Positions 34,848 through 41,944 of a stretch of DNA of 64,000 nt are shown here, in pieces. The translations under genes were made by a program, and so were the position numbers. The stretch lies in NCBI RefSeq assembly GCF_000150275.1, contig NW_002060957.1:1290445-1354444 (forward strand), in the 5' to 3' direction. Positions within the stretch are counted from its first letter, which is position 1, and each line of letters starts with the position of its first letter. The notes under the pieces are model-generated. The model worked only from the letters and a program-made list of their open reading frames with translations. It did no database searches and was not told where the DNA came from. Source of the stretch: Trichoplax adhaerens (Eukaryota > Animalia > Placozoa).

Positions 34848-35165
34848 GTACAGTGTCTTACATTGTTTACGTCGTTCCGTGTTAGTTCCTATGGAAATTA
34901 ATCTTATTTCAGTGCTTAACTACATCTTATTGAGCCTATCAATAAATCGCGTTATCCAATTAAATGAATGTGAGCATGGCGTCTAACATTTTTTACGTCA
35001 TTTCAAGTTAGTCCCGAGAGAATTAATCCTATTTCAGAGCTCAATTAAATCTTACTGGAAACATAAATAAATCATGTTGTTGGATGGCGTGATTGCCGGC
35101 ACAGTGTCTTACATTATTTACGTAGTTCCAGACTATTCCCCAAGGAGATTAATCCTGTTTCCGTC
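34848..35165. repeat. Three diverged ~125-bp tandem units upstream of the neuropeptide promoter
   Basis: Recurring gtct(t/a)acatt..TTTACGT..ATTAATC at ~125-bp spacing (34866/34992/35117 and 34897/35022/35148). Confidence 0.7.
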
Positions 35166-35272
35166 TTGATTATTAATTTGGCAAGAATATAGCCACAAAT
35201 AAAAGACAAAGTAATTCTGAACATTATAGCTCTACATCCACTAGTTTTATTGTTTCTGAAAAGTAATTAACG

Positions 35273-35325
35273 TATAAAAGCCTTCACAACTTATTTTCAC
35301 TCTTACATCAAGTTTTTTTCGCCAG
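35273..35325 (+). promoter_or_regulatory. TATA box and short non-coding first exon of the neuropeptide gene
   Basis: TATAAAAG at 35273-35280, strong donor ccag|gtaaga at 35325/6, acceptor taacag at 35536 just upstream of ATG 35557. Confidence 0.6.
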
Positions 35326-35556
35326 GTAAGACTAATGGGCAAAAAATCGATCACTTTCTGAAAACTCCACTCTTATACTTTAAGCTGTATTTTTTTAATA
35401 TTGGCATCATCATTATCCGTAACTTAAGGTTCTATCTTTCTTAGCAGCAGGGCTAAACTCTAACCATATTATTTGCTTACGAATACAACTTTATTTTACG
35501 TAAACTTATTTAGCGTTCTTTATTTTATCCTAACAGAACGAACCTTCAAAATCAAA

Positions 35557-38500
35557 ATGAGGTCAATTATTCTTATTTGCTTGTTATTCCTTTTCGCTGC
35601 AAAAGTGAATTCTGAATCGTTTGATTCAGATGACAAAAGAGATCTATTCTCAGATGAACACCAACGAAACAATGATGAAAACGTTGTAGAAGATGGTGCT
35701 TCCATAAGCAGACAGTTTGCCTCAGAAAACGACGAAGACAACAATGAGGATCAGGTATATTCATAATCAATAAAATTAATATCGTCTTGAAGGAAATTTA
35801 CTTCTCCGGACAGACATTATATCACTAGAATAAGGTGAAGACCATGGAGTGAACGCCTATATCGAAATTTCTTAATTAGACTGTACGATGTTTAATTTAC
35901 GGCATAACTAGATATGATTTAAATACATTATTGATAGTCAAATAAGATGACAAGATAGCTAGTCAATTCTATTGATTGGCCAGTACATATTCGCAATGTA
36001 AAGCAATAACTATCGAGATCTAATGAAAATGTCTTCATCATTATTAGCAAGTCTTACAAAACAGCTTTGCAACAAGATTTGCAACAAGATAACATAATGC
36101 GCAATCAATCAGTCAATTCCCTGAACCACGTATCAGGGAGCAATATCTACTCATTCAGGAATACTCTTCCTATACCAGTAGACTACAGAAAGACTTAGAC
36201 GCCTCGTATCTTACGTTAAGCACTAATCATAATAACTAACTTTACTTTACGATTTATCGCATTTATATACTCTGTTACAATAGCAAAGACATCTTAGTTA
36301 GTAATGTTGGCGTTGAAACTTGATAATGAATCAAAAGCTAATTTTATCTACTGCTACCTAATGAAGACAACAGTATTTACGAACATAGACCTCAAATGAC
36401 TAATAAAAAGTTATCAGATTACAATATGTTCTATTACGGAACATTTCTACGATAATCTACTATCTACCATAAGTAAATTACTATTACAGTGATTTGAATT
36501 TATAAGAAGATTATTCTCGATTCCCTAATCAAATTACTAGTTTCAGTAGGCTGTATATATCACCATAAAAACTATTGCTATATTTAAATATCACATATCT
36601 AAACTAGAAACCCTTCATAAAAGGGTAAATCAACAAAAGTATCCTAACATAGATGTTTCTACTATAATCTCGATATTACAGTGTATAACACTGTAACAGT
36701 GTCACAAACCAGCTTCGTGACAAGGATTACGTAAAATAAATCTCTAAATTACTATGGTCTTCCAGAATTCAGTATCCCTTAACTACCTCATAAGAATTTA
36801 GACGCCTTTGATTCTACGTTAAAACAACTATACAATTGAGAACTGCTTTATTCAACTATCTCACGGGTTTATATACCCTTCTACAGTAGCTAACATTCAC
36901 AAGTCATCTTATAAAAATACTTGGGTGAGAACATCTACTAACTAGTTTTTCACAGTCGGACTACAATATGCCCATTCACAGAATCATTTCAGTACACATT
37001 ACAGTACAGCAATAAATTTACTGTAACACATTTATAATTAGGGTAATTCCTATTGTAAGTGACTAGTTGTAATATAATATCACTACATTATATTAACCAA
37101 ATTTAGATATCTATTTCTTCACGGTAGTTCGTACCGTGACAAACAGTAAGTGACTAAAGTAGATAGAGAAGGATATACATTGGCGGATTGCATTTTATCA
37201 GATTATGAATTAAGGTATGCCACTGTCACAAGCTAGCTGTGAATGCAACGCGCGATCGTACTCTAGAGCTCTAGCTAACCTATGGACTAGTCTAATGTAA
37301 TACTGAATACCGTAGTTTAACCTTAACGACAACCTAAGTAGCACGTCTTAGCTGGTTTATGTTATAATAAAACTTTATTAACACAGTAAAGACCTTGACA
37401 ACCAAGACTAACATAGACTCGAGTCAGTGACACTAGATCAGATCGGAAGAACAATCACTGCTAACTGACTATTCAGAACCCCTGAGCATATAGAGAACAG
37501 CGGCTCCTTCTATACTCTCATTCTAGTATCCTAGTACATACTAGATGAACTTTAGCATAGAATCAATATACTATAGTATAAGCGATGCCTATATTTTAGG
37601 CTGCTGCATACGAATTTAAAATTCGTAAGACAATAACTTATAAAGGTGTTGTTAGCAAACTAAACAAATTTGCCTAATAAACGCTCTAATTGCTTGAAAA
37701 ATTGCGATTTCATCATGTTCCTTCATAAAGTGTATTTGGTACTACAGTATAGTATAGTAAATAAAGGCATCTAATAGCAAATATCATTGTTGAACGCTTA
37801 GCTTGCAATTCAGCGCAAAAGAAACAGCATAAATTAGTCATTAATTTGCGATATTTAATTCATATTAGATGACAGAATTATTTACTACAATATTGAGATT
37901 TAGGTGATTTTCGTGTTTGAATAGAAAGCTTAATACTACTTTGAAAGCCTGGTAGGCAAAAATATACTCTCATGAGCATGTTGATACTACAGTGTTTAAA
38001 TGCTTTTTGCGACAGATTTATAAAGACAAATAGCACTACGCGTGATTTCTTTATGAAATTCGGCAGATTATGCGTAGTAGAAATACTGTTATACGTAGGT
38101 ATGTCAAAATTAAACCCAACTGTCATATTTAAAATTTTTAATATAGCCCTTAAAAGACATCTAATAAATCGACGATCATCATTATTTTTATATGAGTGTA
38201 TCTGCGATACCATGGACATAAGATATTGGTAAAAGAAAATATACATATTTGGTTAAATTTCTACTTATCGGCAAAAATTTATGTTTATTTAATTATCCTA
38301 AAATTAAATAATATGCACACGCAATTATATTACAAGATATAGTGCCTATAGATAATGATACTGCGTACCTTTAGATTAACATGAAAAACAAATTAATATG
38401 TATGGCTATTCACGAGTATCGTATACTATAGTGAATTTTACAGCAATAAGAATAAGTTTTATTTCATTAATATTGTTATATTTGATATATACTTTAATCT

Positions 38501-40882
38501 ATTATTGCATAATAATTTGCAATATTACAATTCCGAAAAGATGATACTAAAAATAACTAATCAATTATAAAAAACTCTTCACTTTAGATACCTCCTTTGG
38601 GAAAATCTTTCGAACTTCCTGTAAGTAAATAGATAGCGCTACTATAATTATAGACAATGTGTCTGCACTACTATGGGCATAGCTATGTCATCTGCACTAC
38701 TATGTGTAACAACTATTCTCAAAATTATTATTAATAAATTACTTATTATAAAATTTCTTGACTTTAGGAACACAGACGCGGAAAGTCTTTCGAATTTCCT
38801 GTAAGTCTATAGATATCGATACTATAGCCTGCAATAATACTATTCTTAAAGGCAATACTATTAAACAGCTCCTTATAAAACTTCTTGACTTTAGGAACAC
38901 AGACGCGGAAAGTCTTTCGAATTTCCTGTAAGTCTATAGATATCGATACTATAGTCTGCAATGATACTATTTTAAAGGCAATACTATTAAACGGCTCCTT
39001 ATAAAACTTCTTGACTTTAGGAACGCAGACGCGGAAAGTCTTTCGAACTTCCTGTAAGTCTATAGATATCGATACTATAGTCTGCAATGATACTATTTTA
39101 AAGGCAATACTATTAAACGGCTCCTTATAAAACTTCTTGACTTTAGGAACGCAGACGCGGAAAGTCTTTCGAACTTCCTGTAAGTCTATAGATATCGATA
39201 CTATAGTCTGCAATGATACTATTTTAAAGGCAATACTATTAAACAGCTCCTTATAAAACTTCTTGACTTTAGGAACGCAGACGCGGAAAGTCTTTCGAAC
39301 TTCCTGTAAGTCTATAGATATCGATACTATAGTCTGCAATGATACTATTTTAAAGGCAATACTATTAAACGGCTCCTTATAAAACTTCTTGACTTTAGGA
39401 ACGCAGACGCGGAAAGTCTTTCGAACTTCCTGTAAGTCTATAGATATCGATACTATAGCCTGCAATAATACTATTCTTAAAGGCAATACTATTAAATGAC
39501 TTCTTATAAAATTTCTTGACTTTAGGAACGCAGACGCGGAAAGTCTTTCGAATTTCCTGTACGTCTATAGATATCGATACTATAGCCTGCAATAATACTA
39601 TTTTAAAGGCAATACTATTAAACGGCTCCATATAAAATTTCTTGACTTTAGGAACACAGACGCGGAAAGTCTTTCGAATTTCCAGTACGTTAGTAGATAT
39701 CGAAATATTGATCTGCGATAGTACTATTGTCAAAGCGATATTAGTTTATCAAAAATTATAAAAATTTTTGCAATATGAACAATTTTTTGTAAATATTTCT
39801 ATCGATACAATTATGGAATTTGTGTAGTTTTACTGTTGGCCATTAAATCCCTACAAAATCAAGTGATTGATATCCGCATTCTCAAATAATATTAGTGCAA
39901 TACTAATTGTGATAAATTTCTATGTTTCAGGAACGCAGACGCTGGAAATAATTAAATTAGGTTAAATCTTCCGTATGTTACATAGGTAAGAATTTTGTAT
40001 TAATTAGCTAGCGTAGAATATAAACCGATATTCTTACAAATTTATTTACCAACTCCAAACATTTATAAATATCACACGAGTAATATCATCTGTGGAATAT
40101 CATTACAGCAGACATATTTTAGATAAAGATTTCAAAATATTTGACAGTAATATTCTAACAATCCGAGCATTAAACCGCAAATATTATGATGTTTTATATT
40201 TCTACGACACCTCAGACTTATTTGTGAGAATTTTCTATAAACCATTGCGGTGTCAGGAATCGACGTAAATTAATTCCGATGAATAACAATTATATCTAAT
40301 TATCTATCCAAATAGCAATTATCATAAATCAACACTATTTAATTGCGATAAGTAACAACTATATCTGCTCGTCTATTCAACTACTACAGCTGCCCATTAT
40401 TAATCGTTATACAATACAGTTCAACAACACATACAACATTCTGCTTCATATTCGCGCACTTAGTCGATTTTTGATAGTAGACTGTTATCCTAAATGCATT
40501 AGAAATGCCGGATAGCCATATTTGAAAACAAATCTAATGACTCACTAATAATGATAACTTCTTTACAAAAGGAAGGCCGAAGATGTAGCGCTAAGGAAAA
40601 AAAGAACTTTGATCTAATCTTCAATAATTTGAATAGTGTAGTATTAAGTCATTGTTAGTAAATATTAAACCACTCAACCATCTTAAACTTTAATTAACGA
40701 TACTGATCATATCTCAACGTGGGTGTGTAGCTTAGAAGTTTAAATTATGCTCCTCTAATTTGTACTGTAGTTTGAGTCCTTTACTAATTTTTTCTAATTA
40801 ACGATAGCTAAATGTATTGTTCCAATTTGGTAATTTGTTTCGTGATGTATTAGCAAGGCGTGAAGGAGAAATAAAACAATAA
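35557..40882 (+). CDS. ELPE-type neuropeptide precursor. Exons: 35557-35754; nine 33-nt microexons (38588-38620, 38768-38800, 38895-38927, 39021-39053, 39147-39179, 39273-39305, 39399-39431, 39526-39558, 39652-39684); last exon 40808-40882 (~189 aa)
   Basis: Signal peptide MRSIILICLLFLFAAKVNS and acidic propeptide with KR. Spliced repeats IPPLGKSFELP / EHRRGKSFEFP / ERRRGKSFELP give GKSFE(L/F)PE(H) peptides flanked by RR/RRR. Terminal exon LNVLFQFGNLFRDVLARREGEIKQ*. As I recall, GKSFELPE is a described placozoan peptide. Confidence 0.9.
38740..39720. repeat. Near-identical 126/127-bp tandem repeat (~8 units), each one microexon plus one intron
   Basis: Unit ...cttgactttag|gaac(a/g)cagacgcggaaagtctttcgaa(c/t)ttcc(t/a)|gta(a/c)gt... 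with exon-start spacings 127,126,126,126,126,127,126. Confidence 0.97.
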
Positions 40883-41944
40883 TATCATACAAGCTAGAAA
40901 TCGATGTGAATAAAAATATCTATCTATTTTTCATTAAATAGCTAAGTTTAATACAAACATCATTAACTAAATCACTGTAGAATTACTTAGAAATTGCTAA
41001 AGCAAGTTTATAAATTATCAAGTAATCAAGCTGGATTAATTTAGCACTGAAGAAATATGGATCTCATGGTATGTTTAAATTTTATTCAGAGACATATCAA
41101 AGACAACCAATTTCGTGGCAAAAATAGCCTTCTATTCTTAGATCAGTTACCATGTCATATCAATCTATAGTAAAACAGAAGCTATGGACGGCTATATTTC
41201 AGTAGAATCTAGAAATGCAAAACCAAGTAATAGAATAAGTAGAAAGAATAAAGAAAATATATATTATAGGCCATAACAATATAGCGGAAAGTATCTGAAA
41301 AATCGATTTGTAACGAACAACTGACGACAGAATAATTTAAATCAGTTCTAACGATGAAATCAAAATTTTGAAGTGAATATAATCGTATCACAGTATCAAG
41401 GCTGCAGTTATTACGAGTAATCGTCAGCTCTCGATATAATAAAAATTTTATTTAGTAGATCTTAAGTTAACATCAATAGTATTTATGTGAGATCTTTCGA
41501 GTATCAATCAGTAAATGCCAATATTGATACCATTAACTGATAATAGAAAAGATGCCTTAGCCTTATCAAATACGTACAGGTAATACACGAAATTTGTTTA
41601 AAATAGCTAATCTCAAAGCTAGTAATAGCTATGTTTTGGTAGCTATTGTCTTGTTTGCCTTTAGATAACTTAATTTACGATATTCAAGGGGGAAAATTAG
41701 CCCTTATTTTATCGATTTCTCTTGTTTTCACTTCCATTAGGGTTGGTTATAGGCAAGTTTAATTACGAGATAAGTGCAAGGACTAATTTGATAATATACC
41801 CGTTTGAGAACGAAGTTCAGTAAATTTATGAAATAGTCGGTTTGCAAAATGCCCAGTCAATTCATGAAATACTTATTCAGTTCGCGAAAATGCGTACTTA
41901 ATGACAAAGTTAGCTTTATATACTTGCCCATACTATAATAATTA

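What the first reader, a model, noticed from the sequence alone, without database searches (positions are those of the whole stretch)
38588..39684. Neuropeptide repeats encoded by a tandem array of 33-nt microexons; every peptide is built across a splice junction
Seen: the apparent 126/127-bp satellite resolves into nine units of ttag|33 nt|gta(a/c)gt, all phase 0: IPPLGKSFELP, EHRRGKSFEFP x2, ERRRGKSFELP x4, ERRRGKSFEFP, EHRRGKSFEFP. The 1-bp length variants fall only in the intron part, as expected if only the exon frame is constrained. Each mature peptide GKSFE(L/F)P-E gets its last residue(s) and cleavage site from the next exon. Known: repetitive neuropeptide precursors usually carry their repeats inside one large exon. 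Inference: here peptide copy number grows by duplication of an exon-plus-intron unit. The peptide is described, but I am not aware of this gene architecture being highlighted.
Basis: partly seen in the sequence, partly recalled or inferred. Interest (0 to 1): 0.9.

Follow-up and report, generated by a model that had tools for sequence, protein, structure and literature searches.

The report
Trichoplax ELPE peptide gene: tandem mini-exon array
This is the known Trichoplax "ELPE" peptide precursor gene: its nine peptide repeats each sit on their own 33-base exon inside a 126-base tandem repeat, a layout that is already in the public gene models and has precedents, but that no paper I could search discusses.

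Summary
At 38588-39684 there are nine 33-nt, phase-0 segments with AG|...|GT borders. Eight of them lie in a 126/127-bp tandem array that is 96% identical. Exon by exon, they match the public Trichoplax adhaerens model TRIADDRAFT_64280 ("expressed protein", 189 aa): signal-peptide exon 35557-35754, then the nine mini-exons in window order. The Trichoplax sp. H2 model also has nine units.

The product is the published ELPE prepropeptide (peptide GKSFELPE). Each peptide takes its last Glu, or Glu-His, and its basic cleavage site from the next exon.

The design is unusual in this genome but not unique. The SIFGamide, WPPF, MFPF and LFNE repeats each lie in one continuous open frame. The LF peptide gene uses the same one-repeat-per-mini-exon array.

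Tandem peptide-encoding exons are already described for the Xenopus caerulein and magainin genes.

The 3' end is unresolved, with three competing terminal readings.

The gene is real, the architecture is confirmed, and novelty is modest. Earlier notes of this scan report other microexon-built peptide genes in this genome.

The parts
35557..35754 (+). Exon 1 coding part (66 aa): signal peptide MRSIILICLLFLFAAKVNS, then an acidic spacer with one KR site; ends in phase 0 before GTATAT
   Evidence: Identical to residues 1-66 of P0002 (H1) and P0001 (H2). A whole-library phmmer search finds only this protein cluster.
35755..38587 (+). Intron 1 (2833 nt), joining exon 1 directly to the first mini-exon in both public models
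   Evidence: It holds only short unsupported ORFs.
38588..38620 (+). Mini-exon 1, IPPLGKSFELP. It has no upstream cleavage site, so the first peptide is N-terminally extended. It is followed by a 147-nt intron, a unit intron with an internal insertion.
   Evidence: The 21 nt coding GKSFELP are 20/21 identical to unit 4; the aligned intron is 83% identical.
38768..38800 (+). Mini-exon 2, EHRRGKSFEFP; intron 94 nt
38895..38927 (+). Mini-exon 3, EHRRGKSFEFP; intron 93 nt
39021..39053 (+). Mini-exon 4, ERRRGKSFELP; intron 93 nt
39147..39179 (+). Mini-exon 5, ERRRGKSFELP; intron 93 nt
39273..39305 (+). Mini-exon 6, ERRRGKSFELP; intron 93 nt
39399..39431 (+). Mini-exon 7, ERRRGKSFELP; intron 94 nt
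39526..39558 (+). Mini-exon 8, ERRRGKSFEFP; donor GTACGT; intron 93 nt
39652..39684 (+). Mini-exon 9, EHRRGKSFEFP; donor GTACGT at 39685. A second possible donor, GTTAGT, lies 4 nt downstream (exon end 39688); used here, it would give the tail of the H2 model.
38746..39703 (+). Tandem array of the exon-plus-intron unit: period 126/127 bp, 7.6 copies, 96% identity, single locus in the genome
39931..39951 (+). Candidate terminal coding exon, a degenerate tenth unit. Its first 12 nt (ERRR) are identical to a unit start; a 1-nt insertion then gives ERRRWK-stop in frame 0. All three frames stop within the exon. ATTAAA lies at 39951; possible donors lie at 39975 (GTATGT) and 39986 (GTAAGA).
   Evidence: The same exon read in another frame gives the H2 model's tail, TQTLEIIKLG.
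40808..40882 (+). Alternative terminal exon used by the public H1 model (LNVLFQ...EIKQ-stop); AATAAA at 40870 and 40909

Best explanation
This is the Trichoplax adhaerens ELPE prepropeptide gene. A signal-peptide exon (35557-35754) is spliced across a 2.8-kb intron to nine symmetric, phase-0, 33-nt exons, and then to a short terminal exon. Each mini-exon encodes the end of one peptide plus its cleavage site (E-R/H-R-R), followed by the first seven residues of the next peptide (GKSFE-L/F-P). Every mature peptide and every processing site is therefore assembled at an exon-exon junction. After signal-peptide removal, cleavage at RRR or HRR and trimming of basic residues should give about four GKSFELPE plus GKSFEFPE and GKSFEFPEH variants per precursor. 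This processing is inferred from standard prohormone chemistry and is not shown. The array arose and is kept homogeneous by tandem duplication, unequal crossing-over or gene conversion of a 126-bp exon-plus-intron unit. Because all exons are interchangeable modules in the same phase, gain, loss or skipping of a unit always leaves a readable precursor. With 93-nt introns, splicing probably works by intron definition (inferred).
For: Nine AG|33 nt|GT units all lie in one frame that continues exon 1. Exon by exon they are identical to public model P0002 = TRIADDRAFT_64280/XP_002116400, which its source names 'expressed protein'. The independent H2 model P0001 also has nine units and an identical exon 1. 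The published synthetic peptide GKSFELPE was predicted from T. adhaerens proneuropeptides and changes behaviour. The prepropeptide is reported from TH1 genomes and transcriptomes and detected by FISH in dorsal epithelial cells. Introns carry an in-frame stop at codon 4. The 126-bp unit is 96% identical and occurs at one locus. The terminal exon is a decayed unit that keeps the ERRR codons. The LF gene in the same genome has the same design.
Against: Transcript support is therefore second-hand, from database names and papers. No transcript-derived protein fragments were found in the protein collections. Najle et al. list the peptide only as 'previously described', with no mass-spectrometry values. 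Within the array, exons are no more conserved than introns (p = 0.73), so constraint cannot be shown from the young units.
Confidence: 0.87

Rival explanations
1. The array is real, but its exons are alternatively included. Skipping of any subset keeps the frame, so the animal would make a family of transcripts that differ in peptide copy number and in the L/F and E/EH variant mix.
For: All nine exons are symmetric, phase 0-0, and interchangeable. Units 8 and 9 have a weaker GTACGT donor. Three competing 3' ends exist among the models. Another first-stage note on this same stretch proposed the same idea.
Against: Both public models include all nine units in order. Splice signals are near-identical and canonical across units. 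Roelants et al. argue that in the Xenopus arrays, with quasi-identical exons, alternative splicing adds little diversity. There is no read evidence either way.
Confidence: 0.2
2. The 126-bp array is a non-coding satellite inside an intron or intergenic DNA, and the mini-exon gene models are gene-predictor artefacts.
For: The units are 96% identical, so the nine 'exons' are not independent observations. Exon and intron variability do not differ. No transcript-derived fragments were found.
Against: The frame continues exactly from a signal-peptide exon 2.8 kb upstream. The diverged unit 1 keeps 20/21 nt of the GKSFELP codons. The H1 model is named 'expressed protein'. The prepropeptide is reported from transcriptomes and seen by FISH and single-cell data. 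The LF gene, whose published peptide also needs a junction, shows the same design.
Confidence: 0.03
3. The repeat encodes a protein on the minus strand: a 240-aa open frame at 38764-39486 made of 42-aa units.
For: One search lists this ORF and a second, 112-aa one on the minus strand.
Against: It is open only because 126 = 3 x 42, and it breaks at the two 127-bp units. It starts with TTG. It has no homologue among 5.8 billion clusters. Its Pfam hits are scattered sub-threshold sums with no significant stretch.
Confidence: 0.01

Closest known systems
Xenopus laevis caerulein and magainin precursor genes (Roelants et al. 2013, PMC3731216)
   Same: [quoted passage not shown] The authors attribute them to unequal crossing-over or gene conversion and see them as a way to boost peptide yield per transcript.
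   Different: Vertebrate skin-gland defence peptides with no sequence relationship to ELPE. I did not check exon sizes, or whether peptides straddle junctions, in that paper. Here the exon is 33 nt, the intron 93 nt, and each peptide and cleavage site is completed by the next exon.
Trichoplax adhaerens LF peptide gene (same genome, C1414 minus strand, about 253,350-254,470)
   Same: Six near-identical 33/36-nt phase-0 exons (DSQ(D)GY(A/P)LFRKD) lie in a ~238-bp tandem exon-plus-intron unit. The published peptide DDSQDGYALF takes its first Asp from the preceding exon.
   Different: Different peptide and longer introns. The junction falls at the N-terminus of the peptide rather than the C-terminus. 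Further diverged ...LFKKE exons follow.
Schistosoma micro-exon genes (MEGs)
   Same: Genes for secreted products made of runs of very short symmetric exons (3-81 bp) after a signal-peptide exon (bioRxiv 10.1101/2023.06.21.545858).
   Different: MEG introns are long (up to 5 kb), the exons are not a homogeneous tandem repeat, and the products are not multi-copy cleaved peptides. There is no homology: the only hits for ELPE are Trichoplax proteins.
Ordinary multi-copy neuropeptide precursors, e.g. Trichoplax SIFGamide, WPPF, MFPF, LFNE
   Same: Signal peptide, then many peptide copies separated by basic cleavage sites.
   Different: In the same genome these repeats sit 42, 48, 36 and 33 nt apart in one uninterrupted open frame, i.e. 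one exon. ELPE has an intron in every repeat.
Fibrillar collagen genes built from 54-bp exon units (textbook knowledge, not tested here)
   Same: A repetitive protein built by tandem duplication of a short, frame-preserving exon plus its intron.
   Different: A structural protein with much older and more diverged units and no peptide processing.

Membership tests
Multi-copy secreted prepropeptide (proneuropeptide-type precursor) | N-terminal signal peptide | tested here: met
   Exon 1 starts MRS + IILICLLFLFAA + KVNS, with small residues at -3/-1. This was read from the sequence; no predictor was available.
Multi-copy secreted prepropeptide (proneuropeptide-type precursor) | Repeated short peptide flanked by di/tribasic cleavage sites | tested here: met
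   Eight RRR or HRR sites separate nine GKSFE(L/F)P cores in P0002 and in the window exons.
Multi-copy secreted prepropeptide (proneuropeptide-type precursor) | Spliced mRNA exists | tested here: inconclusive
   The only support is second-hand: the source name 'expressed protein' and papers reporting transcriptome, FISH and single-cell expression. Read mapping was impossible.
Multi-copy secreted prepropeptide (proneuropeptide-type precursor) | Mature peptide detected; receptor known | not testable with these tools
   Najle et al. list GKSFELPE as 'previously described' with no MS values. Only bath application of synthetic peptide is reported.
Tandem peptide-encoding exon array (Xenopus caerulein/magainin type) | Peptide-coding exon and its intron repeated head to tail within one gene | tested here: met
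   126/127-bp unit, 7.6 copies, 96% identity. Every unit has AG/GT borders.
Tandem peptide-encoding exon array (Xenopus caerulein/magainin type) | Near-zero divergence between units (recent duplication or gene conversion) | tested here: met
   12 variable columns of 127 among units 2-8, in a mosaic pattern of intron variants. H1 and H2 differ only at the H/R site of units 2 and 4.
Schistosome-type micro-exon gene (MEG) | Run of short symmetric exons after a signal-peptide exon | tested here: met
   Nine 33-nt phase-0 exons.
Schistosome-type micro-exon gene (MEG) | Sequence homology to MEG proteins, or protein variation by differential exon use | tested here: not met
   Homology was tested and is absent: the only hits are Trichoplax proteins and there is no Pfam match. 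Differential exon use was not testable without reads. The resemblance is in design only, so ELPE is not a member.

The most novel reading that the evidence does not exclude
Junction-straddling modular mini-exon arrays may be a general placozoan way of building secreted multi-copy peptide genes. ELPE and LF are shown here by sequence; other cases are reported only in earlier scan notes. Under this reading, peptide dose and variant ratio are tuned at the DNA level by unequal crossing-over and at the RNA level by frame-safe exon skipping.
Probability: 0.15. Interest if true: 0.6.

Novelty: new member of a known kind. Interest (0 to 1): 0.4.

Why it matters
Placozoan peptides are used as a model for how peptidergic signalling arose before neurons. 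Knowing that ELPE, and LF, are encoded one repeat per mini-exon has three consequences. It explains how their copy number can change. It warns that intron-blind searches of the genome will miss such peptides: the full LF peptide has no contiguous genomic match. It also makes testable whether exon skipping modulates peptide output. The gene, its peptide and its exon structure are already public, and tandem peptide-encoding exons are known from frogs, so this refines an existing picture and is not a new principle.

Tried and rejected

The H1/H2 comparison is at protein level only.

3. Exons were checked one by one, by reference, against the public model.

4. I looked for transcript-derived protein fragments with the full model and with exon 1. 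Nothing was found beyond the two public models.

5. I tested for exon-specific constraint within the array and found none (2/33 vs 10/94 variable columns, p = 0.73).

6. The 240-aa minus-strand ORF across the array is rejected as a by-product of the 3 x 42 period.

7. An Rfam scan of 35000-41500 found nothing. The inverted repeats found are weak, AT-rich chance matches.

8. The supplement text held for Mayorova et al. lacks the precursor sequence, and no supplement is held for Varoqueaux et al.. Nikitin 2015 is not held.

Full report
**What is in the sequence.** The stretch 38588-39684 holds nine 33-nt segments. Each is preceded by TTTAG and followed by GTAAGT (units 1-7) or GTACGT (units 8 and 9). 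Tandem Repeats Finder reports a 126-bp period, 7.6 copies and 96% matches over 38746-39703. The unit occurs only at this locus in the 105.6-Mb, 1414-contig assembly the window comes from.

Seven of the spacers are 93 or 94 nt. The spacer after unit 1 is 147 nt, a unit intron with an internal insertion. The one after unit 9 is 246 nt; it begins as a decayed unit intron. Every spacer starts GTA AGT CTA TAG in the exon frame, so an unspliced reading stops after three codons.

**What it is.**
- An ATG at 35557 opens a 66-codon exon with a typical signal peptide. It ends in phase 0 at 35754 before GTATAT.
- A whole-library phmmer search with this exon found a single protein cluster. Its two members are Trichoplax sp. 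H2 TrispH2_002981 (177 aa) and T. adhaerens TRIADDRAFT_64280 / XP_002116400, which its source names "expressed protein" (189 aa).
- Checked exon by exon and by reference, the H1 model equals exon 1, then the nine mini-exons in window order, then a terminal exon at 40808-40882.
- The window is therefore T. adhaerens H1, and the mini-exon structure has been in the public annotation all along.

**The product is the published ELPE prepropeptide.**
- Varoqueaux et al. (bioRxiv 10.1101/360925) synthesised "ELPE" (GKSFELPE) from T. adhaerens proneuropeptides. At 20 uM it induced flattening and churning.
- Mayorova et al. [quoted passage not shown] They detect it by FISH in nearly all dorsal epithelial cells, find it only in TH1 and TH2, and doubt that its primary role is to start feeding.
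- Najle et al. 2023 (PMC10580291) map it to TrH2_TrispH2_002981 as "previously described", with no mass-spectrometry values.
- None of these papers contains the words exon, intron or microexon. The only paper in the library that has both "Trichoplax" and "microexon" as a theme concerns the mitochondrial cox1 gene.

**How it most likely works.**
- Each mini-exon encodes E-(R/H)-R-R followed by GKSFE(L/F)P. The C-terminal Glu (or Glu-His) and the basic cleavage site of each peptide therefore come from the next exon. This is shown by the sequence and the gene models.
- Standard prohormone processing would then give about four GKSFELPE plus GKSFEFPE and GKSFEFPEH variants, and an N-terminally extended first peptide. 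This step is inferred, not shown.
- All exons are symmetric, phase-0 modules, so any duplication, deletion or skipping of a unit leaves an intact precursor.
- The 96%-identical units, the mosaic of intron variants among units and a decayed tenth unit at the 3' end support growth and homogenisation by tandem duplication, unequal crossing-over or gene conversion.
- H1 and H2 both have nine units. They differ only at the His/Arg codon of units 2 and 4.

**What is not supported.** Among units 2-8, exons are no less variable than introns (2/33 vs 10/94 columns, Fisher p = 0.73). There is only one indel column, so "indels only in introns" is what chance predicts. The only hint of constraint is that the diverged unit 1 keeps 20 of 21 nt of the GKSFELP codons, against 83% identity in its alignable intron.

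**The 3' end is unresolved.** There are three readings.
- Donor at 39684 joined to the exon at 39931 gives ERRRWK-stop. It would complete the ninth peptide with Glu plus RRR, and the first 12 nt of that exon are identical to a unit start.
- A donor 4 nt downstream (39688|GTTAGT) joined to the same exon reproduces the H2 model's tail, VRTQTLEIIKLG.
- The H1 model skips that exon and uses 40808-40882.

The exon at 39931 has stops in all three frames, so it ends the coding region in whichever frame it is read, if it is included at all.

**Context in the same genome.**
- Degenerate patterns for published peptides show four precursors with the ordinary architecture. Their repeats lie in one uninterrupted open frame: SIFGamide (at least 39 copies, 42-nt spacing), WPPF (48 nt), MFPF (multiples of 36 nt) and LFNE (33 nt).
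- The full LF peptide has no contiguous genomic match.
- Its gene, on C1414 minus strand at about 253,350-254,470, consists of six near-identical 33/36-nt phase-0 exons (DSQ(D)GY(A/P)LFRKD). They lie in a ~238-bp tandem exon-plus-intron unit and are followed by more diverged ...LFKKE exons. The published DDSQDGYALF takes its first Asp from the previous exon.
- ELPE is therefore unusual but not unique.
- Earlier notes of this scan report further microexon-built peptide genes in this genome, some with RNA support. I used them as leads only.

**Precedents elsewhere.** Roelants et al. [quoted passage not shown] They attribute this to unequal crossing-over or gene conversion and see it as a way to boost peptide synthesis. 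Schistosome micro-exon genes share the design of a signal-peptide exon followed by a run of short symmetric exons, but they are not homologous and are not tandem arrays.

**Rivals considered.**
- Exon skipping that generates transcripts with variable copy number cannot be excluded without reads (about 0.2).
- A non-coding satellite with artefactual gene models is very unlikely, given the frame continuity with a signal-peptide exon 2.8 kb upstream, the database and literature expression evidence, and the parallel LF gene.
- The 240-aa minus-strand ORF exists only because 126 = 3 x 42. It breaks at the 127-bp units, has no homologue and has no significant Pfam stretch.
- Rfam finds nothing in 35000-41500.

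**Limits.** Transcript support therefore rests on the source's "expressed protein" label, which I take from my own knowledge of JGI naming to mean EST support, and on the cited papers.

**Verdict.** The gene, the peptide and the exon structure are already public, and the design has a described precedent and a second example in this genome. I file it as a new member of a known kind, of moderate interest mainly as part of a wider pattern of mini-exon-built peptide genes in placozoans.

Noticed in passing
L031/L028 = G000:C1414:~251,100-254,470 (minus strand): The LF peptide gene is built like ELPE: six near-identical 33/36-nt phase-0 exons (DSQ(D)GY(A/P)LFRKD) in a ~238-bp tandem exon-plus-intron unit, followed by more diverged ...LFKKE|gta exons. 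The published LF peptide straddles a junction.
   Followed up: partly
G000:C1401:696468-698296 (L022-L025): The SIFGamide precursor has at least 39 copies of ...ANLKSIFGGKR at exact 42-nt spacing in one open frame that runs off the fetched locus (more than 527 codons). This is the opposite architecture to ELPE in the same genome.
   Followed up: partly
G000:C1024:5497-5652 and G000:C1414:238387-238476: Identical LFNE repeat DNA appears on a small contig and on a large one. This is either a duplicated gene or an unplaced allelic or assembly copy. The C1414 copy lies only about 15 kb from the LF gene.
   Followed up: no
window 38764-39486 (minus strand): A 240-aa TTG-initiated ORF runs through the array only because the period is 3 x 42 nt. 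It breaks at the 127-bp units and has no homologues. An ORF-based annotator could miscall it.
   Followed up: yes
window 39652-39951: The H2 public model's C-terminal tail is reproduced in H1 only by a donor 4 nt downstream of the unit-type donor. The unit-type donor instead gives ERRRWK-stop, which completes the ninth peptide. One of the public 3' ends is probably wrong, or both are used.
   Followed up: partly
P0001 vs P0002, units 2 and 4: In H2 every ...EFP exon is followed by an EHRR exon and every ...ELP exon by ERRR, a perfect match across all 8 junctions. In H1 the His/Arg site instead tracks the Phe/Leu site within the same exon. The His pattern looks shifted by one unit between the two lineages. 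Point mutation or gene conversion could explain it; this is unresolved.
   Followed up: no
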